DNA of 63,476 nucleotides, filler included, from Octopus bimaculoides (GCF_001194135.2; 4 parts of 3 records of this genome joined end to end with filler, not necessarily neighbours in it); one strand, 5' to 3'; positions 23,455 through 44,260 are shown, counted from the first letter of the whole stretch. The notes: generated from the letters alone by a model not told the origin. Numbers and translations are program-made.

Positions 23455-23654
23455 ATACATAACAAAAACACCAGGACTTACAAATATATATAACATACAG
23501 AAAATTGCACTACTGGGTACTGCACACATTCTACGCAAAACACTTTCAATACAGTAAACATAAGAGCACCACAGCAAACCACAGCACATACCCAAGGCGC
23601 ACAGAGCTGCGCTCGGTAGTGAAGTGAAAGCACGTTATAAAAATAAAACTACTG
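23455..23654 (+). mobile_element. R4/Dong 3' end (family DA), followed by (AAT)/(GAT)n
   Basis: IQKIALLGTAHILRKTLSIQ* plus 3' UTR ending aaaactactg-aat; same sequence as at 24590-24891 and 44038-44260. Confidence 0.85.
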
Positions 23655-23682
23655 AATAACAATAATAATAATATTAATAATA

Positions 23683-23780
<98 letters not shown>

Positions 23781-23790
23781 CATAATAATA

Positions 23791-24891
23791 AGAAAACCTG
23801 TTTTCAGAAGAGCAGATGCTGCAAGGGCGCACACGGCTGTAAAGAACAACTAATGATCAATAAAGCCATAACTGAAGACAGTCGCAGAAAGAAGAAAGGC
23901 CTAAGTATGGCCTGGATCAACTACCGAAAAGCTTTTGATATCATTCCACACGCATGGATCCTCGAAACACAAGCCATGAACAAGGTAGCACCAACAATCA
24001 TAAAATACATAAGACACTCTATGAATAAATGGCATACAGTGCTACAGCTCCAGACAAAAGAGGAACTCATAAAAACCAAAGCTATCCCCATTAGAAGAGG
24101 AATATTCCAGGGAGACACTCTCTCTCCACTCCTTTTCGGTTTGGCACTGACACCTTTGTCTGACATGCTAACTAGAACTGGATGCGGATACAACTGCTAT
24201 GGTAAACAATCAACCACCTCTTATATATGGATGACCTAAAACTGTACGATACAAATGATAAACAGCTGGAAACATTACTATAGACAGTACATGGATTTAC
24301 CAAAGAAATAAACATGAAATTTGGCTTAGAAAAATGTGCCAAAGCAACCTTGAAAAGAGGAAAACTAGTTAAGAGTAGTAACATCACACTAGATAAAGCA
24401 AATGAAATGAGGGAATTAGACCAAAGCCAGACATATAAATATTTAGGAATCAATGAACTAGATATGATACAATACACACAAATGAAAGAGAAAATAAAAA
24501 AAGAGAATACTATAGACGAGTTAGATTAATACTGAAAACAAAGCTCTATGTGAAAAACAAGATAATAGGTATCACCACTCTAGCCATCAAAATACAAAGA
24601 CATGGAAATAGAGGTAACTCGAATGGGGTGTCTAAAAACAGAAACAATTCCTATCATAGTGAGTGCATTAGGTCTGATAAAAAAATATTCAGACAAATAC
24701 AAAAACACCAGGACTAACAAATATATATAACATACAGAAAATTGCACTACTGGGCACTGCACACATCTTACGTAAAATACTTTCAAAACAGTAACCATAA
24801 GAGCATCACAGCAAACCACAGTATATACCCAAGGCACACAGAGCTGCGCTCGGTAGTACAGTGAAAGCACGTTATAAAAATAAGACTACTG
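23791..24891 (+). mobile_element. R4/Dong-clade LINE (family DA): RT domain plus 3' end, 5'-truncated and internally deleted
   Basis: GCKEQLMINK, AWINYRKAFDIIPH, GIFQGDTLSPLLF, LLYMDDLKLY, MKFGLEKCA and YKYLGI, then an abrupt jump near 24587 to KYKDMEIEVTRM..PIIVSALG. Flanked by (AAT)n. Confidence 0.92.
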
Positions 24892-24914
24892 AATAATAAA
24901 CATATTAATAATAT

Positions 24915-25346
24915 AGGCATTGGCTCTTATGACTTCTGATCTTTACTGACTGGAAGTGTTACCACGTACATTGTTTTGTCTTGGTATAAAAGATGGGCTA
25001 CAGCAAACATTCTGTTCAATACCACAGATTTCCTTGTCAGTCGTTTGACCATAACCAGTTGAGCATGTTCCTTGGTGGCTGACGATATGTGCATCTCTGA
25101 TCACGAGCAGAAGTAGTGGGGGAGCATCATTATTATGTGTTCAGAGGAATTCTTTGGGGTTTGAATAATTCACCTTTGGAAACATGGGTGTTTCGTCCAA
25201 CCTTTAAAAAAACCCTTATTCAGGGGCCTTTTGAGCGGGATGGGCTACTCGACTTGAAGAAAATTCTAACTGGGCTCCACCTGCATGATTATACGCTGTT
25301 TATCTTGATTTGAAATCACCATGTCGCGCACATATGGCTGTGATGC
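24915..25346 (+). mobile_element. Family C non-coding interspersed element (runs into gap)
   Basis: Reverse complement of 62615-63150; starts right after the AAT tail of the preceding Dong copy. Confidence 0.8.
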
Positions 25347-26272
25347 NNNNNNNNNNNNNNNNNNNNNNNNNNNNNNNNNNNNNNNNNNNNNNNNNNNNNN
25401 NNNNNNNNNNNNNNNNNNNNNNNNNNNNNNNNNNNNNNNNNNNNNNNNNNNNNNNNNNNNNNNNNNNNNNNNNNNNNNNNNNNNNNNNNNNNNNNNNNNN
25501 NNNNNNNNNNNNNNNNNNNNNNNNNNNNNNNNNNNNNNNNNNNNNNNNNNNNNNNNNNNNNNNNNNNNNNNNNNNNNNNNNNNNNNNNNNNNNNNNNNNN
25601 NNNNNNNNNNNNNNNNNNNNNNNNNNNNNNNNNNNNNNNNNNNNNNNNNNNNNNNNNNNNNNNNNNNNNNNNNNNNNNNNNNNNNNNNNNNNNNNNNNNN
25701 NNNNNNNNNNNNNNNNNNNNNNNNNNNNNNNNNNNNNNNNNNNNNNNNNNNNNNNNNNNNNNNNNNNNNNNNNNNNNNNNNNNNNNNNNNNNNNNNNNNN
25801 NNNNNNNNNNNNNNNNNNNNNNNNNNNNNNNNNNNNNNNNNNNNNNNNNNNNNNNNNNNNNNNNNNNNNNNNNNNNNNNNNNNNNNNNNNNNNNNNNNNN
25901 NNNNNNNNNNNNNNNNNNNNNNNNNNNNNNNNNNNNNNNNNNNNNNNNNNNNNNNNNNNNNNNNNNNNNNNNNNNNNNNNNNNNNNNNNNNNNNNNNNNN
26001 NNNNNNNNNNNNNNNNNNNNNNNNNNNNNNNNNNNNNNNNNNNNNNNNNNNNNNNNNNNNNNNNNNNNNNNNNNNNNNNNNNNNNNNNNNNNNNNNNNNN
26101 NNNNNNNNNNNNNNNNNNNNNNNNNNNNNNNNNNNNNNNNNNNNNNNNNNNNNNNNNNNNNNNNNNNNNNNNNNNNNNNNNNNNTCAAGCTTTCATCTCT
26201 TATCTTTCATTCGCCCTAGGACGCTGGGTCTGTCTCGACAAGTGATTGTAACAAACATGCAGATTAAATTTA

Positions 26273-26339
<67 letters not shown>

Positions 26340-26469
26340 GTAAAAACAACAACAACAACAACAAAATGATTTTGCGTAAATGACTTCTATTAGTAATTTT
26401 TTAGGGTAATAGATTGAGAAAAACCCATCGAACATCGAACAAAATGCTTTGCAATATTTGTTCTGGACA

Positions 26470-27060
26470 AGGCGGTGAGCTGGCAGAATCGTTAGCACAT
26501 CGGGAAAAATGCTTAGCGGCATTTCGTCCGTCTTTACGTTCTGAGTTCAAATGTCGCCAAGGTCGACTTTGCATTTCATCCTTTCGAAATCGATAAAGTA
26601 AGTACCAGTTGAAGCCTGGGGTCGATGTAACTGACTTACCCCATCCACTGAACTTGCTGGCGTCGTGCCAAAATTTGAAACCAGTATTTGTGCTGGCCCT
26701 TTACATTATGAATACAAATTCCACCGAAACCAATTTTGCCTTTCATCCTGGGGGTTGATAAATTAAAATAACAATTAATTATTGGAGTCGATGGTATCGA
26801 TTAATACCCCCAACCTGCTTTAATTAAAATTGCTGATTTTCATGTAAATCAGAAACCATTGTCAATTTTTTAGACGGATTAATAGAATCGTTAGAGCGTC
26901 GGACTAATGCGTTGGAGTATTTGTTCCGGATCTTTACGTTCTGAGTTCAAATCATATCAAGGTGAACCTTTCCTTTTATCTTACTGCTGTGGCCGATAGT
27001 ATCGACCAGTCTCGTCTTTTAAAATTACTGACCATGTACCTAAATCAAAACCCATTATTT
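26470..27060 (+). mobile_element. Cluster of three SINE family A copies, progressively more degenerate
   Basis: Family A head or core at about 26470, 26715 and 26875. Confidence 0.8.
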
Positions 27061-27586
27061 AGTCATTTTAGTGTTTTTAGTATACGGCCCACCATACAAA
27101 TGCTCATATAACCCTCATTGAGGCAAGTTTTTTCATCTCTGGTTTACACTATCTTTAAGAGCAATAAGTCTCAAGTATTGCAGATAGTGAAAAAACCCCC
27201 CCAAAAAACAGAACAAACTGCTGGCCTTGTGCCAAAATTTGAAACCAATATTTGACCAAGTAGATGACAGTGGTGACACTTCATGTGCTGGGTCAGGTAA
27301 TATTTGGAATGATGGGTGACAGAATTTGTACAGAAATTCTATATGTCTTGCAGTATTTAGTCACATGAACTTTATGCTCCAAATTCAAATCATGCTGGGA
27401 CTGGTTTTACTTTTTGTCAAACCAGAGTCAATAAAGTAAGTACTGGTCAAGAAGTGGGGTTGATACAGTGGAATATACTCCTATATTTTCATTAATATTC
27501 TCCATGCCTGTTATTAATTTAGCCCTTGTCTGTCAAAGAAACAGCAGTCAAGAAGTGGAGTTGATATAATGGAATATACCATTAGC

Positions 27587-28249
27587 TTTCCATTAATCAT
27601 ACCTTCCATTAATCTACCCCTACGTTTCATCAATCAACCCATTTACCTTTCATAAATCTACACTTTACAATCTAACCGCATCACATTTCCTCAATCATCC
27701 CTTACAGTCTGTCAATCAACACCCTTTTTCTTTCATAAATCTAGCCCTCTATCTTACATCAATCGAACCCTCATCTGTCATCAATTTAACCTTTTATGTC
27801 TTATCACCTTACCTTTTTATTTTCGTCAATCTACCTCTTTACCTTTTACCAATGTACTCCTCAGCTTACATCAGTTGACCCCTTTACCTTCCATTTAGTT
27901 ATCTCTTATCTTTCATCGATCAACCACCTCACTTTTTATTAATCTACGCCTTACTTTCCATCAATCTACCCCTTATTTTTAATCAATCTGCTCCTCATCT
28001 TTCATTATTCTACCCTTTGCCTGGCATCAATCTACTCCTTGCCTTCCATTAATCCACCCCTCTCTTTTCATCAGTCAACTCTCACCTTTTATTAATCTAC
28101 TCCTTACTTTCCATTAGTCAATCCCTTTACCTTCCACCTTCTTCACATTTCAATCTACCCACTCACCTATCATCAGCTTACTCCTTATTTTTCATCACTC
28201 TATGTCTTCATCTTTCATCAATCTACCCCTTGCCTTATAGTAATCTAAC
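27587..28249. repeat. Degenerate 22-23-bp minisatellite, consensus about TTTCATCAATCTACCCCTTACC (about 30 units)
   Basis: Recurring (c/t)aatcta(c)ccc units at a roughly 22-23-nt period with no unique spacers. Confidence 0.75.
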
Positions 28250-28939
28250 ATTTTTCGTTTTCCTAATACAGGGCCAATAAAATCAGTAATTTGTTGGGGT
28301 TGATGTAATACACCACCTCACCAATGTGTGGTATTTGAAATCAAATAATTTAATGAAATCTGTTTTTATTATTTTCAGTTTCTATAAATACTAAGAACTG
28401 AAATTAAATTTATTGATTGAACAGAGTTCAATGTTAGGTCAGCTAACAATAAATTGCATTTCATTTGATGTATGCTGATATATTGCTGTCATTATTGTTG
28501 TTTAACCCTAGCTCAATCTTGTTCTAGCACATGCATAACCCAAAACATTCAAATCATGACCAACCTGTCTTCTCCTCAGACATAGCGTAAGTAAATCTAA
28601 GTATATGCATTGCTATCAATTACTACAATGTTCTTGTCCTTTTATTTTAGATCAGCAAATTCAGAAATTGAGGTATAATTGGTTGCTATTTCTAGCAGAT
28701 GGGCTAAACAAGTCATGACTACCTTGCTGTCTTTAATACAAAGGTGTTCACGTAGGAAGTTTGTTTACTTCAGAGTATATACAAAAGTTGGACGTTACAA
28801 CGATACGTTAACCAGGAAGTCACTAAACAAGTTCTTTTATAGATATACTCCTTACATATTTCATCGAAGTACTCTTTATTTTTGTATGTATTCTCTTTAT
28901 TATGTTAACAACACGGTGATCTCATATCAAGATAAGCAG

Positions 28940-29380
28940 ATTTTTACATTAGGAATCTACCTGATTTTTGTGTATCTTGGCTTTTAATCAGTTAGTCCCC
29001 AATGCATGACCTCGTGCTGCTACTAACAAACTTTCTGTCTCTCTTTTTGCCTTTCTTTCTGTAGCCACAATCATGTCTCACTATAACTATTTCCTGCTAC
29101 TATGTTTGGAAATCTATAACGCAAAGGCTTCTCTTGTTAGTCAGATAATCTTGTTTCTGTTTCCTGGATTTTAACTACATTTGACTTTTTGGTTTCCCTA
29201 TTCCTTATCTCTTACACTAGCAGTTCTAAATAAAATTTTCTCACTATTACTTACATAGTCAGCTATATCTACTCTAGCTGAATCCGTACAATCTTCTACT
29301 GATATCAAATCTCTACCACCACCCTTGTTAGGTAAATACGATCTTGTTTCTCCTGCTCTAGAATAAACTCCTCCATTCAT
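28940..29380 (-). mobile_element. Inverted R4/Dong ORF fragment (post-RT region to start of zinc knuckle)
   Basis: RSYLPNKGGGRDLISVEDC...LWLQK..KRETESLLVAARGHALGTN*LKAKIHKNQVDS*C. Confidence 0.85.
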
Positions 29381-29385
29381 ATGTT

Positions 29386-29550
29386 CAAGGTTATGTGCTG
29401 TTTATCTTGATATGAGGTCATCGTGTCGCACACATATGGTGATGATGTGCCTGATGAACCGTTATCACACCAGTAATCATGATTGGTATATTGGGCTTCG
29501 TATGTTTGTATCCCAGTCTCACTTTGATGGCAAGCGCTGCTCTCTCACTC
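29386..29550 (+). mobile_element. Family C 3' end
   Basis: ctgtttatcttgatatgag...gctgctctctcactc followed immediately by (AAT)n. Confidence 0.85.
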
Positions 29551-29607
29551 AATAATAATAATAATAATAATAATAACAACAACAACAACACCAACAACAA
29601 CAACAAC

Positions 29608-29671
<64 letters not shown>

Positions 29672-29673
29672 GC

Positions 29674-29740
<67 letters not shown>
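29551..29740. repeat. (AAT)/(AAC)n compound microsatellite
   Basis: Seen directly. Confidence 0.95.
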
Positions 29741-29745
<5 letters not shown>

Positions 29746-30030
29746 GAGAGTAGACATGATACCAATAGTAATTGGTGCACTTGGAAGTATCAGCACTCAA
29801 TTACCAACATGGCTGAAAAAGATTGGTGCAAGTATGAAGGTAGAACACCTACAAAAATCAGCATTGCTTGGAACTANNNNNNNNNNNNNNNNNNNNNNNN
29901 NNNNNNNNNNNNNNNNNNNNNNNNNNNNNNNNNNNNNNNNNNNNNNNNNNNNNNNNNNNNNNNNNNNNNNNNNNNNNNNNNNNNNNNNNNNNNNNNNNNN
30001 NNNNNNNNNNNNNNNNNNNNNNNNNNNNNN

Positions 30031-30096
<66 letters not shown>

Positions 30097-30352
30097 GAGA
30101 GTAGACATGATACCAATAGTAATTGGTGCACTTGGAAGTATCAGCACTCAATTACCAACATGGCTGAAAAAGATTGGTGCAAGTATGAAGGTAGAACACC
30201 TACAAAAATCAGCATTGCTTGGAACTACAAGAGTTCTTCGCAGGGTTCTTGAAACATGGTCAGTAAACAAGTGTTACCTTAGTCAGCTAGATGTGGACAG
30301 CTGACACTTTCCATCATACCCAGCAAAATAAGCCGTGAGATTTAATCAAATG
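29741..30352 (+). mobile_element. R4/Dong 3' end (family DD); first 136 bp duplicated across the gap
   Basis: VDMIPIVIGALGSIST..LQKSALLGTTRVLRRVL plus 3' UTR, with AAT repeats on both sides. Confidence 0.85.
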
Positions 30353-30401
30353 ATAATATTAATAATAATATTAATAATAATAATAGTGATAATAATAACT
30401 C

Positions 30402-31646: not shown

Positions 31647-32349
31647 NNNNNNNNNNNNNNNNNNNNNNNNNNNNNNNNNNNNNNNNNNNNNNNNNNNNNN
31701 NNNNNNNNNNNNNNNNNNNNNNNNNNNNNNNNNNNNNNNNNNNNNNNNNNNNNNNNNNNNNNNNNNNNNNNNNNNNNNNNNNNNNNNNNNNNNNNNNNNN
31801 NNNNNNNNNNNNNNNNNNNNNNNNNNNNNNNNNNNNNNNNNNNNNNNNNNNNNNNNNNNNNNNNNNNNNNNNNNNNNNNNNNNNNNNNNNNNNNNNNNNN
31901 NNNNNNNNNNNNNNNNNNNNNNNNNNNNNNNNNNNNNNNNNNNNNNNNNNNNNNNNNNNNNNNNNNNNNNNNNNNNNNNNNNNNNNNNNNNNNNNNNNNN
32001 NNNNNNNNNNNNNNNNNNNNNNNNNNNNNNNNNNNNNNNNNNNNNNNNNNNNNNNNNNNNNNNNNNNNNNNNNNNNNNNNNNNNNNNNNNNNNNNNNNNN
32101 NNNNNNNNNNNNNNNNNNNNNNNNNNNNNNNNNNNNNNNNNNNNNNNNNNNNNNNNNNNNNNNNNNNNNNNNNNNNNNNNNNNNNNNNNNNNNNNNNNNN
32201 NNNNNNNNNNNNNNNNNNNNNNNNNNNNNNNNNNNNNNNNNNNNNNNNNNNNNNNNNNNNNNNNNNNNNNNNNNNNNNNNNNTATATATATATATATACC
32301 CACACGCACATACACACGTAAATATACGCATATATATGTCTGTGTGTGT

Positions 32350-32380
<31 letters not shown>

Positions 32381-32479
32381 GGTGACAGACATGCACAAGC
32401 ATACATATGCATATATATAATATGTATATATATGTAAACGTAATTATATATATATACTTACATACACACATGCACACAC

Positions 32480-33376
32480 AAACGCATAAACAATTCTATG
32501 CTCCAGTGGACATTCACACATGCGTATACACAATACCCTAACACACATACATATATATGAAATACTCTAACACACACATACTGACATACGTAAACAGAAT
32601 GTATTATTACTGTATCAAAACATGCATTCACAAAACTCTCTAAAAGACCCGCTGGTTGATGTTTGAAAAGTTCCTATACTGTTGTACACATATACTCAAA
32701 TAAACTACACACTACATCTTCATACGCGCGCAACATCTCACCACGCACACACAAAATGCTCTAACACATATGTACAGAAATTAATACACGCAATCACATC
32801 ATATAAATCACATTTTAACGTCTTAGCACACACATGTACGCACATACAAATACCACGTACTAAAGTCTTAACGTACGCATACATACACCTAACTGAACTG
32901 AGTACATACACGTTTATACACATATATCATACTCTAACTCTTTAACAGATACTGATACGTACACATATATTAAACACTAACACTTTAGCACATTATACAC
33001 TCTCTCAACACAACTAATACATGCACGTATGTACACATACACCACAAATTAGCGTCTTAACACACACATACATACACACACTCAACTCATCCCAATACAT
33101 GTACCACACACTAGATACACTCATACACACACTTAACACAAACTACTAACACACATACACACGCAACTACACTAACACATATACGTATATATACTAAAAC
33201 ACAAGCATATATAGGTATCTACACTAATGCATACATAAGACTGTGATTTATGTGATGTGACTGCGTGTATTAGTTTCTGTACATATGTGTTAATGTATTT
33301 TATGTGTGTGTGTGCGTGAAGGTATAGTGTGTAGTTTATTTGTGTATGTGTCCAGTAGTGTAGCAACTTTTCAAAC

Positions 33377-33448
<72 letters not shown>

Positions 33449-33918
33449 CCCATAGGCACATAAACTAAAACACATTTTATTTTGATAAATAAACAACCAT
33501 GAATTTTACAAGCTATTATATTACACATCAATAATATTAAATAACTTATTTATACTCAAAATGATATAAATATAAATACTATCATGTTCCTATTATTATT
33601 TGTGATATTTAAATAAATCTTTATATATTATATATGCACCAAAAAATAAATTTATATATCCTGAGTTACATCTAAGTATAAAAAAAAACAACCACAGACC
33701 CCAATATTCAATTTATTTATTACAATTACATTAATTTATATGAATTATAATTATCACTTTAAAAACCACATAAGATAATTCACATATATTGTTCCAGAAT
33801 ATTTTAATGATGCTTAATTAAGATTAATTAACATTAATTTTCATAACATTAACAGAAACTAATACACGCAACCTCATTACATAAATCGCATTCTAACGTC
33901 TTAGCACATGCGCGCGCG

Positions 33919-33966
<48 letters not shown>

Positions 33967-34423
33967 ACACAACGTAGTACAAACAGATAATATACAAATA
34001 CCACATTAACAAACACATAAATAAACATGTACTAATACACACGTATAAGCATCTTCACTAACACACTGTATACACATATACGAACACACTCACACACACA
34101 CACACACCTATGGGCAGCAAACTAACAGTCATATATGCACTTATACTAGCACACAGCTACATACACACGCATATATACACAAACTAATCTATACACACTA
34201 CACACCACACATACTAAGTGACATACACAATGACGTTTTTAGTATGTTCTACACTAGTTGCTCCCCCCACACATAAACACGCACACTCACATACATACAT
34301 ACGCACATACAAATATGCACGTACACTAACACACACTTCAAAACGCACTTACCCAACACGTCAACATACTCATACACACTTACGTGTGAATGATTTAAAT
34401 GTATTATGTTCCGGTTGACACAA

Positions 34424-34493
<70 letters not shown>

Positions 34494-34950
34494 TAGACAC
34501 ATGCACGTACACATAGACACACACTCACATACAGACATATACTCATGCGCATACATACGCACATTCACACACACACCAATACCTTAACATAAACATACAT
34601 ACACACGCTGATACATTAAGATACACATTAACATATCATATTGACATATTGACATACACACGTATTAACATATTGATACACGCACATCTACACATATATA
34701 CATGTTAAAATACGTACATACACACGCATATACACACACATTAAGACAGTCATATATACACATACACAGATGCATGCATATGTACACACGTACACACACA
34801 TAAACTGACACATACACACACGTGCTTTACACACGCTAACACACATGCACACTCACTAGCAGAACCATACATATACACAAACATATATACACACATACAC
34901 TGACATTAACACACACACACANNNNNNNNNNTACACACATACACTGACAT

Positions 34951-35008
<58 letters not shown>

Positions 35009-35345
35009 AAACGGGTATACGTATACACTATTACATCCATACCATACAATATATACATACACATGCACTGATACACACACATCCGCACACACTAATACAC
35101 ACATACATACATTCATACATTCACATACATACACACATACATACGCACACACACATACATACGCATTCACACATACCTACCAACCTACCTACCTACCTAC
35201 TTACCTACCTACCTACATACATACATACATACATGCACAGAGACACACATACACACATACATACGTACACAGACATACATATATGCATACATATACACAT
35301 ATATACACAAATATGCACTCACACATACATGCATATACATACTTA
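32480..35345. repeat. About 2.9-kb AC/ACAT-rich low-complexity region with internal direct and inverted duplications
   Basis: Strong C-over-G skew with a local polarity flip at 33242-33376. Confidence 0.8.
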
Positions 35346-35744
35346 TACACACACCTGTTCTACTCCAGTAGACCCTAATTGATTTTATCAGTATTTACAG
35401 TCATTTCACTTTAATATCTTCATATTTACAATGGTGGTGGTGACGGTGGTTTTGGTAGGAGTTGTCGTGGTTGTTGTAGTGGTGGGTGGTAGTGGTGGTG
35501 GTGAAGGTGGGGCAGTGGTTGTGTTGGTGGTTGTGGGCGTGGTCTTGGTGATGGCGGTGGCATATTTTGAAATCATTTAATACGTACATTTCAGGTTTGT
35601 GTAATATATAACAGCAAGACCATCCATTATGTAAATCTACCTCAGTGAAAGCGTTTCAAAATATAAAGAAATTCATGGAAAAACTTCAATATATATATGT
35701 GTGGTTAGAGTTACTAAATTAGGAAAATAGATATATCATATACA

Positions 35745-42885: not shown

Positions 42886-43292
42886 TAATATATATATATA
42901 TATATATATACACAAAACACACACACACACAGTGATATTAAATGAATATCCACACATACATATTCATATTAATATTTGTATGCAGGTGACTCTTTCTATA
43001 TCTGTGCAATGTTGAGGACAGAAGTATTTTTTATTTGCCAAATGAACAACAAATACTGCCGCCCACACCACTCAAAGTGTTTCTGAAACTATTTTTACAT
43101 ATAAACAACACGATTAGTAGCTAACGACATGTTGTTCTGTTTTCACAAACCATGAAGCTAATCCTTTGTCAATGTTAATTTCTGTCAATTTTGTGCATTT
43201 TATAAAATACGACCCAAAGTATTTACTTAGAGAATATAGTGAATGCTCTACAGAGGACATCAGCGGAATAATGCGCTCGGAGAAGGAATGTG

Positions 43293-43391: not shown

Positions 43392-43456
<65 letters not shown>

Positions 43457-43714
43457 CGATATAAACGTACCTGTCAAGACCTACCAAAAACTGAGCAAAT
43501 ATAAAGATCTTGAAATAGAAATTAGCAAAATGTGGAATCTGAAGACGAAAACAATACCTATTGTCATAGGTGCCCTGGGAATGACAGCGAAACGGGCTGA
43601 TTACTACCTAGATCAGATTCCAGGAAACCCCAAAATGGCTGAAGTTCAAAAGATAGTGCTCATGGGAACTGCCCATATCCTACGTAAAATACTGTCTATG
43701 TAAAGCAAACACAT
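43457..43714 (+). mobile_element. R4/Dong 3' end (family DE) after (AAT)/(GAT)n
   Basis: KLSKYKDLEIEISKMWNLKTKTIPIVIGALG...VQKIVLMGTAHILRKILSM*. Confidence 0.88.
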
Positions 43715-44037: not shown

Positions 44038-44260
44038 AGGTATAATAAAAAATATTCAGACAAATACATAACAAAAACACCAGGACTTACAAATATATAT
44101 TACAGAAAATTGCACTACTGGGCACTGCACACATCCTACGCAAAACACTTTCAATACAGTAACCATAAGAACACCACAGCAAACCACAGCACATACCCAA
44201 GGCGCACAGAGCTGCGCTCGGTAGTGAAGTGAAAGCACGTTATAAAAAATAAAACTACTG
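44038..44260 (+). mobile_element. R4/Dong 3' end (family DA) between (AAT)n tracts
   Basis: Near-identical to 23455-23654. Confidence 0.88.

What the first reader, a model, noticed from the sequence alone, without database searches (positions are those of the whole stretch)
28909..29550. Inverted chimera fusing family C to Dong ORF2: possible record of one retrotransposition event
Seen: [31-bp family C piece, inverted, 28909-28939] + [Dong ORF2 fragment, inverted, 28940-29380] + [family C 3' end, direct, 29386-29550] + (AAT)n. The two C arms match at 27/31 (all transitions) and share a G (atcaccG / gtcatcG) where the three other C copies have A, so they appear to come from one molecule. Established: twin priming gives 5' inversions with short duplications (described mainly for L1), and R2-type RTs template-jump. 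Inference: priming on a C RNA, second-strand priming, then a switch to Dong mRNA. This would be direct evidence that C uses Dong machinery, and possibly that 5' inversion occurs in an RLE-clade element.
Basis: partly seen in the sequence, partly recalled or inferred. Interest (0 to 1): 0.75.

Follow-up and report, generated by a model that had tools for sequence, protein, structure and literature searches.

The report
Inverted SINE-LINE chimera beside (AAT)n tail
A short non-coding retroelement copy carries, at its 5' end, an upside-down block made of 31-39 bases of itself plus a decayed piece of a Dong-like LINE gene. The layout fits one aberrant retrotransposition event, but this single old locus cannot prove that.

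Summary
The anatomy is real. An inverted 31-nt family-C piece (28909-28939; 39 nt in register from 28901) is followed by an inverted 441-444 nt fragment of an R2-like (RLE-type, Dong-like) LINE ORF (28940-29383). Then come a direct 5'-truncated C 3' end (29384-29550) and a compound (AAT/AAC)n tract (29551-29742).

The arms match 27/31, all mismatches transitions, and a chance origin is excluded. Polarity, order and sharp boundaries fit cDNA primed from the upstream top strand on C, then continued on a Dong-derived template.

Its supporting arguments are weak:
- The arms are no closer to each other (4 mismatches) than to the only other C copy available (5 and 5).
- The shared G sits in a CpG, so it may be ancestral.
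- The Dong piece has 9 in-frame stops, so it looks older than the arm duplication or was copied from a dead transcript.

Rivals remain: a DNA-level inversion or templated repair, a minus-oriented composite element sharing a module with C, and misassembly. R2 "snap-back" and "extra template" 5' junctions, and L1 twin priming on two RNAs, are already published.

Verdict: plausible (about 0.4) but unproven; modest interest.

The parts
28901..28908 (.). Left junction. TATGT is complementary, in register, to the ACATA that follows the arm in both C copies. Then comes TAA, mismatched against C's gtg, which could be one remaining unit of a (TAA)n target.
   Evidence: the IR extends to 39 nt, 82% complementary. 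The 5/5 in-register match comes after a 3-nt mismatch patch.
28909..28939 (-). Inverted 31-nt piece of family C, corresponding to 29398-29428. Its right boundary is sharp at 28939/28940.
   Evidence: 27/31 to the direct arm with all mismatches transitions, and 26/31 to copy 25296-25326. Zero chance matches in shuffles.
28940..29383 (-). Fragment of a Dong-like (R2-group, RLE-type) LINE ORF: the linker region between the RT/thumb and the CCHC zinc knuckle. It reads MNGG...KAKIHKNQVDS*CK, has 9 in-frame stops, and has no 3' part and no tail.
   Evidence: profile positions 112-264 of 450, E = 1.9e-21 (low confidence before MNGG); closest proteins 51-54% identical; 9 stops in 146 codons.
29384..29550 (+). 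Direct, 5'-truncated 3' part of family C, containing the second arm at 29398-29428.
   Evidence: 29391-29447 matches 25289-25345 at 81%, E = 1e-9. Read by eye, 9/14 identities plus 3 transitions upstream reach back to 29384. 29448-29550 cannot be verified in this piece.
29551..29742 (+). Compound (AAT)n(AAC)n microsatellite: C's tail and/or the target tract.
   Evidence: TRF: period 3, 64 copies; sequence.
29743..30398 (+). Next element in the array: a 5'-truncated Dong-like 3' end. It has an intact C-terminal 70 codons (...IPIVIGALG...LLGTTRVLRRVLE...), a 45-nt UTR and an (AAT)n tail at 30349-30398. It is interrupted by gap 29877-30030, whose flanks 29680-29876 and 30031-30227 are identical.
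   Evidence: family D17, 100%; profile 398-449, E = 1.8e-14.
24917..25346 (+). The only other family-C copy in the piece. It starts right after a Dong-like element's short tail and is cut by the gap at 25347. It was used as the outgroup for the arms.
28478..28505 (-). Short degenerate (AAY)n-like run on the minus strand, about 400 bp left of the inverted C piece. It could be an inverted tail remnant if the inverted block is larger than thought. It is not statistically distinctive.
   Evidence: At 19 or more matches out of 24, four such minus-strand runs exist in the piece, so proximity has p of about 0.09.

Best explanation
I think this is most likely one aberrant target-primed reverse transcription event of the non-autonomous element C at a (TAA)n tract, carried out by a Dong-like, R2-group (RLE) LINE protein.

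Inferred sequence of steps:
1. The bottom-strand nick primed on C's (AAU)n tail. This gave the direct, 5'-truncated C copy at 29384-29550.
2. The upstream top-strand 3' end (...TATGT-TAA, 28901-28908) annealed internally to a C template and was extended for 31 nt, giving 28909-28939.
3. The polymerase then continued on a second, sense-strand Dong-derived template for about 440 nt, giving 28940-29383.
4. The two cDNA ends were joined head to head at about 29381-29385.

Shown: the anatomy, the polarity, the sharp boundaries, the left-junction microhomology and the RLE-LINE identity of the fragment.

Inferred: that RNA, not DNA, was the template; that it was one event; and that the Dong-like protein did it.

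The Dong-derived template was probably a transcript of an already dead copy or a non-autonomous derivative, not the mRNA of an active element.
For: - The inverted repeat is far beyond chance.
- Both inverted segments are antisense on the + strand, with C nearest the flank. This is the order expected for cDNA grown from the top-strand 3' end.
- The left junction has a 5-nt in-register microhomology followed by TAA.
- The C-to-Dong switch is sharp at 28939/28940, with only chance-level similarity beyond it.
- The direct C copy extends about 14 nt past the arm, so the arm is a duplication of the kind seen at twin-priming junctions.
- All other Dong-like fragments lie on the + strand, as do nearly all (AAT)n-type tracts (15 clusters against 4 weak minus-strand runs). 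The inverted piece also lacks its 3' end and tail, so ordinary TPRT cannot have made it.
- The arms differ at four sites, which argues against a recent assembly or library artefact.
- Precedents exist. R2 proteins give antisense 'snap-back' and 'extra template' 5' junctions in human cells (PMC11371274). L1 twin priming can use different RNAs at the two ends (bioRxiv 10.1101/2024.12.14.628481).
Against: - The arms are no more alike (4/31 differences) than either is to another C copy (5/31). Nothing ties them to one molecule or one event.
- Nine in-frame stops in 146 codons need d of about 0.2-0.3. With an intact template, P(9 or more stops) is at most 0.01 at the arms' implied 0.065 per lineage, and at most about 0.25 at the upper bound of 0.15.
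- Both the donor and acceptor sites of the switch are internal, unlike the end-to-end jumps characterised for R2 RT.
- A 3-nt mismatch separates the microhomology from the first copied base.
- No target-site duplication can be defined, and no (AAT)n remains upstream except possibly one TAA.
- No second example, empty site or long-read support could be obtained.
- The scaffold is a gapped short-read draft with an unmerged overlap 300 bp away.
Confidence: 0.4

Rival explanations
1. DNA-level rearrangement. The Dong piece was resident genomic DNA in the array, originally + oriented like its neighbours. It was inverted and truncated by double-strand-break repair, either during the C insertion (DSB-end remodelling) or later. 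The 31-39-nt inverted C patch is a microhomology-primed templated insertion copied from the nearby C copy or its RNA.
For: - The Dong piece looks older than the arm duplication.
- Dong fragments are the commonest neighbours of (AAT)n tracts here, so 'Dong' needs no special template.
- The left-junction microhomology with a mismatch suits polymerase-theta-type synthesis as well as RT.
- Short inversions of flanking genomic DNA next to L1 insertions are documented.
Against: - It needs several breaks, or hairpin processing plus a separate templated patch.
- The published end-remodelling model predicts a sense, not antisense, patch next to the flank if the patch were added before the flip (my inference).
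- No + oriented copy or remainder of that Dong element (profile 1-111 or 265-449) is left on either side.
- A 31-nt inverted templated insertion from 460 bp away is long and distant for such events.
Confidence: 0.25
2. The inverted block, possibly 28478-29383 including a short minus-strand (AAY)n run, is one minus-oriented composite or non-autonomous Dong derivative. It merely shares a 31-39-nt module with family C. C later inserted, or was co-inserted from the other DNA end, next to its 5' end.
For: - A degenerate (AAY)8-like run lies on the minus strand at 28478-28505, where a tail would be.
- Internally deleted Dong derivatives exist in the piece: 23792-24915 jumps from profile position 96 to 382.
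- A non-autonomous master would explain the many stops.
- Two independent TPRT insertions at one junction are known for L1.
Against: - The minus-strand run is not distinctive: four such runs occur in 18.7 kb, p of about 0.09.
- 28503-28900 has no repeat in the piece and no significant similarity to C's 3' region.
- The module is short and sharply bounded, and is as close to C copies as they are to each other.
- A (TAA)n-specific element should not insert in the opposite orientation in the same tract (inference from the one-way array).
- The head-to-head join has 5 bp or less between the two elements.
Confidence: 0.2
3. Assembly or library artefact: a chimeric contig join in a gapped short-read scaffold.
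For: The scaffold has nine N-gaps in 21.5 kb. It also has an unmerged 197-bp overlap (29680-29876 = 30031-30227) right beside the structure.
Against: The structure lies inside one gap-free contig (26185-29876). The arms differ at 4 sites and share at most 15 identical bases in a row, too few for a k-mer mis-join. An artefactual copy would be identical.
Confidence: 0.05

Closest known systems
L1 5' inversion by twin priming (Ostertag and Kazazian 2001), including the variant in which the two DNA ends are extended on different RNAs (bioRxiv 10.1101/2024.12.14.628481)
   Same: An inverted 5' block plus a direct, tailed 3' block. There is a short duplication at the inversion point, priming from the upstream top strand with microhomology, and a second template.
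   Different: Here the enzyme would be an RLE-type (R2-group) LINE protein acting on a non-autonomous element at a (TAA)n target. Most of the inverted block is a different element, picked up after only 31 nt. No TSD is definable. In cell assays 5' inversions were almost confined to L1 in human cells (PMC4245944).
R2 'snap-back' and 'extra template' 5' junctions in engineered R2 insertion (PRINT, PMC11371274)
   Same: An RLE-clade protein, with antisense element sequence joined to the upstream target and foreign RNA (U6) sequence added at the 5' end by template jumping.
   Different: Snap-back copies the cDNA itself, which would put sense, not antisense, foreign sequence on that strand. The extra templates were copied from their 3' ends. 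That work used human cells and an rDNA target, not a natural germline copy.
Chimeric retrocopies made by LINE RT template switching (U6-L1 type)
   Same: Two unrelated RNAs are joined in one insertion, with a sharp junction and possibly a 3-4-nt microhomology (ctgc).
   Different: Those chimeras are colinear, with both parts in the same orientation. Here the chimera is on the inverted arm and both switch points are internal.
Short inversions and templated insertions at DSB ends (L1-induced end remodelling; polymerase-theta end joining)
   Same: A few-hundred-bp inverted genomic segment next to an insertion, and a short inverted patch copied from nearby with microhomology.
   Different: It would need both processes together. 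The patch orientation does not follow simply from the hairpin model.
Dong / R4-clade (TAA)n-specific LINEs (Bombyx Dong, DongAg, DongBg; PMC3812793)
   Same: The elements here have RT followed by CCHC and an RLE, are 5'-truncated copies flanked by (AAT)n, and form one-way head-to-tail arrays.
   Different: Clade placement by RT phylogeny was not done. Only fragments are present in the piece.

Membership tests
R2-group (RLE-type) LINE, Dong/R4-like | Reverse transcriptase domain | tested here: met
   Homologues of the fragment carry Pfam RVT_1 (P0073, E = 5e-14). A neighbouring fragment at 23853-24236 hits RVT_1 at 9e-8. The inverted fragment itself lies downstream of the RT.
R2-group (RLE-type) LINE, Dong/R4-like | CCHC zinc knuckle and PD-(D/E)xK restriction-like endonuclease C-terminal to the RT, with no N-terminal APE | tested here: met
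   The family consensus has CRLC..ETVSHIVSEC and RRPDL..D..K. The only informative PDB hits are R2 proteins (one further weak hit, clathrin heavy chain, E = 0.49). They align colinearly over thumb, CCHC and RLE, E = 1e-8. Pfam zf-RVT also hits. The window fragment stops at the first Cys. Absence of an APE domain is not testable on fragments.
R2-group (RLE-type) LINE, Dong/R4-like | Target specificity for (TAA)n with fixed orientation | tested here: met
   Every + oriented Dong-like fragment in the piece is bounded by (AAT)n-type tracts, nearly all in the same orientation. An unrelated metagenome contig, L001, shows the same layout. The literature gives Dong = TAA microsatellites.
R2-group (RLE-type) LINE, Dong/R4-like | RT phylogeny placing it in the R4/Dong clade rather than R2, NeSL, HERO or CRE | not tested
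   No reference Dong/R4 sequences were available in the tools, so 'Dong-like' rests on target and architecture only.
Twin-priming 5' inversion | Inverted 5' segment joined to a direct 3' segment carrying the tail, with cDNA polarity consistent with top-strand priming | tested here: met
Twin-priming 5' inversion | Inverted and direct segments are contiguous parts of one element RNA, apart from a small gap or overlap | tested here: not met
   Only 31-39 nt of the inverted block is C. The other roughly 440 nt is a Dong-like ORF fragment unrelated to C upstream sequence: 24917-25288 has no similarity and no profile hit.
Twin-priming 5' inversion | Target-site duplication flanking the whole structure | tested here: inconclusive
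   By eye the left flank (tattatgttaa) and the sequence after the tract (gaggagag...) share nothing. With a microsatellite target a TSD cannot be defined.
Twin-priming 5' inversion | Single event: empty orthologous or allelic site lacking the whole block | not testable with these tools
   The source genome is not in the searchable collections.
Non-autonomous partner (SINE-like) of the Dong-like LINE: family C | Same tail and target as the LINE | tested here: met
   The C copy at 29384-29550 ends in (AAT)n. The copy at 24917 starts directly after a Dong-like element's tail.
Non-autonomous partner (SINE-like) of the Dong-like LINE: family C | 3' end sequence shared with the partner LINE | tested here: not met
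   No similarity between C's last 110 nt and the 3' ends of the Dong-like copies in the piece (by eye; BLAST). The true partner subfamily may simply be absent from the piece.
Non-autonomous partner (SINE-like) of the Dong-like LINE: family C | Small-RNA-derived (pol III) head | tested here: not met
   No Rfam or tRNA match in 24917-25346. The head may be of an undescribed kind.

The most novel reading that the evidence does not exclude
A natural germline record, in what is probably a cephalopod genome, of a Dong-like RLE-LINE protein doing two things. It primed reverse transcription from both DNA ends of its (TAA)n target, and it switched between a trans-mobilised SINE-like RNA (C) and a Dong-derived RNA inside one insertion. 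That would show twin priming and inter-template switching in vivo outside the L1/APE world, and would physically link C to Dong RNPs.
Probability: 0.3. Interest if true: 0.55.

Novelty: new member of a known kind. Interest (0 to 1): 0.35.

Why it matters
If the single-event reading is right, this locus is a fossil of how an R2-group, microsatellite-targeting LINE finishes integration. It would imply use of the upstream DNA end as a second primer and a template switch between RNAs.

Those steps are poorly understood for RLE elements, and they now matter for R2-based gene-insertion tools, where snap-back and extra-template junctions are unwanted by-products. It would also give circumstantial support for trans-mobilisation of an abundant unclassified SINE-like family by Dong-like elements.

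As it stands the locus is one old, decayed example in a draft assembly. Its value is as a search image for a genome-wide survey, not as evidence in itself.

Tried and rejected
1. The 31 nt might simply continue the Dong ORF into the CCHC knuckle, which would make C Dong-derived. By eye 'CK(I)C LS*Y EITV' looked like CxxC-x4-ET. The 26-sequence profile gives no hit for that stretch or for either C copy (scores 0.1 or below). Rejected as unsupported.

2. The profile alignment runs on to 29407, inside the C arm. That part has low posterior probability and rests on an R-x-T match. C homology to the other copy is the better explanation for 29384-29397.

3. The inverted piece (profile 112-264) and the direct Dong 3' end (398-449) might be two halves of one older Dong copy split by C. 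This needs a 400-bp deletion. Stop densities are 9/146 against 0/70 codons, P(0) about 0.06-0.13 at d = 0.2-0.3. The direct piece also looks like an ordinary 5'-truncated insertion into (AAT)n. Not favoured, not excluded.

4. A larger inverted block ending in a minus-strand tail at 28478-28505. The run is not distinctive, and 28503-28900 shows no similarity to C or to anything else in the piece.

5. Finding more C copies or the source genome. Window ORFs are absent from the protein collection. Two metagenome pattern scans gave nothing or chance hits. The word-indexed protein search with the stop-ridden fragment found nothing. The protein searches returned only fragments from other organisms.

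6. C head as tRNA or another known RNA: none found.

7. Shared 3' end between C and the local Dong copies: none found.

Full report
**Context.** The piece (23455-45024) is a gapped draft scaffold of an AT-rich eukaryote (GC about 0.35, nine N-gaps). The finding lies inside one gap-free contig, 26185-29876.

The piece is an array of retroelement fragments that end in, and are preceded by, (AAT)n-type microsatellites. At 19 or more matches out of 24, there are 15 (AAY)n-like clusters on the + strand. Only 4 weak ones lie on the minus strand, and there is no (ATT)n run of four or more units.

**What the LINE is.** I built a profile from 26 homologues returned (450 positions, covering late RT to the C-terminus). 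It finds Dong-like coding fragments on the + strand at 23483-23548, 24314-24785, 29747-30253, 43431-43697 and 44058-44153. It finds exactly one on the minus strand, from 29407/29380 down to 28943.
- Family members carry Pfam RVT_1 and zf-RVT.
- Their only informative matches among solved structures are R2 retrotransposon proteins (the one other hit, clathrin heavy chain at E = 0.49, is noise). These align colinearly over the thumb, the CCHC knuckle and the RLE motif (RKPDL...).
- The consensus reads ...CRLC-x4-ETVSHIVSEC...RHD..A..HW...RRPDL..D..K...VVPVVIGALG...LLGTARILRKVLE.
- With the (AAT)n context this fits the (TAA)n-specific Dong lineage (PMC3812793). Dong-R4 LINEs are abundant and recently active in octopus genomes (PMC13282606).
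- Clade placement by RT phylogeny was not done. 'ORF2' is a loose label for a group that, to my knowledge, has one ORF.

**Checking the observation.**
- Arms 28909-28939 and 29398-29428 match 27/31, and all four mismatches are transitions. BLAST gives E = 2.6e-5. A consensus 31-mer with up to 3 mismatches hits only these two sites and 25296-25326, with none in 100 shuffles.
- The repeat extends in register to 39 nt (28901-28939 / 29398-29436). After a 3-nt mismatch patch (taa against gtg) five more bases, TATGT, match both C copies.
- Toward the Dong piece the homology stops sharply at 28939/28940.
- The minus strand 29380 to 28943 reads MNGGVYSRAGETRSYLPNKGGGRDLISVEDC...RETESLLVAARGHALGTN*LKAKIHKNQVDS*CK. 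This is profile 121-264, E = 1.9e-21, with nine in-frame stops, and it ends at the first Cys of the CCHC.
- The direct C part matches the only other C copy in the piece (24917-25346, cut by a gap) over 29391-29447 at 81%. By eye the match runs back to 29384. 29448-29550 cannot be checked.
- A compound (AAT)n(AAC)n tract follows at 29551-29742. After it comes an ordinary 5'-truncated Dong-like 3' end with 70 intact codons, a short UTR and its own (AAT)n tail.
- The N-gap at 29877-30030 is flanked by two identical 197-bp stretches. This is an unmerged contig overlap.

**What favours a single aberrant retrotransposition.**
- Both inverted segments are antisense on the + strand, with C next to the flank. 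This is the order expected if the upstream top-strand 3' end primed on a C template and synthesis then passed to a sense Dong-derived template.
- The left flank ends ...TATGT-TAA. The TATGT pairs in register with C, and TAA could be the last unit of the (TAA)n target.
- The direct copy overlaps the inverted piece by 31-53 nt, the kind of duplication seen at L1 twin-priming junctions.
- The Dong piece is the only minus-oriented one in the array. It lacks its 3' part and tail, so ordinary TPRT cannot have produced it.
- A (TAA)n-specific element should not enter the same tract backwards. Two 5'-truncated ends abutting within 5 bp is also hard to get from independent insertions.
- Precedents exist. 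R2 proteins in human cells give antisense 'snap-back' 5' junctions and 'extra template' (U6) junctions (PMC11371274). L1 twin priming can use different mRNAs at the two ends (bioRxiv 10.1101/2024.12.14.628481).

- 'One molecule' is not shown. Over the 31 nt, inverted against direct gives 4 differences, inverted against the 25296 copy gives 5, and direct against the 25296 copy gives 5. The three form a star, with each 2-3 changes from the three-way consensus.
- The shared G lies in a CpG (caccGtg / catcGtg against caccAtg). CpG observed/expected is 0.72 in the piece. The G may therefore be the ancestral or a subfamily state. Only one of the 'other copies' is available to me.
- Nine stops in 146 codons is a lot. 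In simulations, even with the most stop-prone back-translation, nine or more stops has P of 0.01 or less at d = 0.065 per site, which is the arms' implied per-lineage divergence. It has P of about 0.07-0.25 at 0.15, the upper bound, and becomes likely only at d = 0.2-0.3. The Dong segment is therefore older than the arm duplication, or was copied from a dead copy or a non-autonomous derivative. It was probably not mRNA of the active element supplying the protein.
- The switch is internal to internal, unlike the end-to-end jumps characterised for R2 RT.
- No TSD can be defined.

**Rivals.**
- *(a) DNA-level origin.* A resident Dong fragment was inverted or truncated by break repair, and the C patch is a microhomology-primed templated insertion. 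Short inversions of flanking DNA next to L1 insertions are documented. This explains the age difference and why the segment is 'Dong'. However, it needs several breaks, leaves no remainder of that Dong copy, and does not simply give an antisense patch at the flank.
- *(b) Composite element.* The inverted block is one minus-oriented composite element sharing a short module with C, perhaps ending in the (AAY)-like run at 28478-28505. That run is not distinctive (four such runs in 18.7 kb). 28503-28900 matches nothing in the piece, and matches C no better than shuffles do.
- *(c) Misassembly.* This is unlikely because the arms differ and share at most 15 identical bases in a row.

**Ideas rejected.**
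- The 31 nt is not detectably the continuation of the Dong CCHC coding sequence, and C is not detectably Dong-coding.
- The inverted and direct Dong pieces are probably not halves of one copy (400-bp gap).
- C's 3' end is unlike the local Dong 3' ends.
- C's head matches no known small RNA.

**What could not be done.** Window ORFs are not in the protein collection. Metagenome scans for C gave nothing real. Protein searches returned only fragments from other organisms. Other C-Dong chimeras, the C consensus, the empty site and long reads therefore remain untested.

**Verdict.** The single-event, twin-priming-plus-template-switch reading is the most economical account of the inverted repeat and the anomalous orientation, at about 0.4. 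Even if true, it would be a natural example of junction types already described for L1 and, experimentally, for R2. I therefore rate it a new member of a known kind, of modest interest. It is best used as a search image for a genome-wide survey.

Noticed in passing
29680-29876 and 30031-30227 (flanking N-gap 29877-30030): The two gap flanks are 100% identical over 197 bp. This is an unmerged contig overlap through the (AAT)n tract, so the gap is artificial and the sequence is really continuous.
   Followed up: partly
23455-25346: Head-to-tail array in one orientation: a Dong-like 3' end (23462-23654), then (AAT)n, then a 5'-truncated Dong-like copy at 23792-24915 with an internal deletion (profile 96 to 382) and several stops, then a short tail, then a full-length start of family C at 24917.
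   Followed up: partly
26185-26272 and 43166-43292: Two further, mutually unrelated 3' ends that stop at long (AAT)n/(ATA)n tracts. They are probably additional non-autonomous families using the same tail and target.
   Followed up: no
26470-26990: Fragments of a tRNA-like SINE (...GTTCTGAGTTCAAAT...GGTCGACTTTGCATTTCATCC...), three partial copies. From memory this resembles the very abundant octopus SINE, which suggests a cephalopod source. ARAGORN and Rfam do not call it.
   Followed up: partly
27588-28250: A degenerate 22-bp (44/88-bp higher-order) minisatellite, TCAATCTAACCCTCTATCTTTCA, about 17-30 units, strongly C/T-rich on the + strand.
   Followed up: no
28478-28505: A short (AAY)n-like run on the minus strand (ATTATTGTTGTT plus a degenerate extension), 400 bp left of the inverted block. 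It is one of only four such minus-strand runs in the piece and could be an inverted tail remnant, but it is not significant.
   Followed up: yes
L001 (ENA metagenome contig ERZ4903303 NODE_72020), 70-520: An unrelated metagenome contig carries a 5'-truncated Dong-like C-terminus, 63% identical to the window's, again preceded by (ATA)n and followed by an AAT-rich tail. The (TAA)n association therefore holds across taxa.
   Followed up: partly
32283-35400: About 3 kb of extreme strand asymmetry (GC skew down to -0.6), with many (AC)n and ACAT-type microsatellites and repeated ~43-nt units. I did not examine what it is.
   Followed up: no
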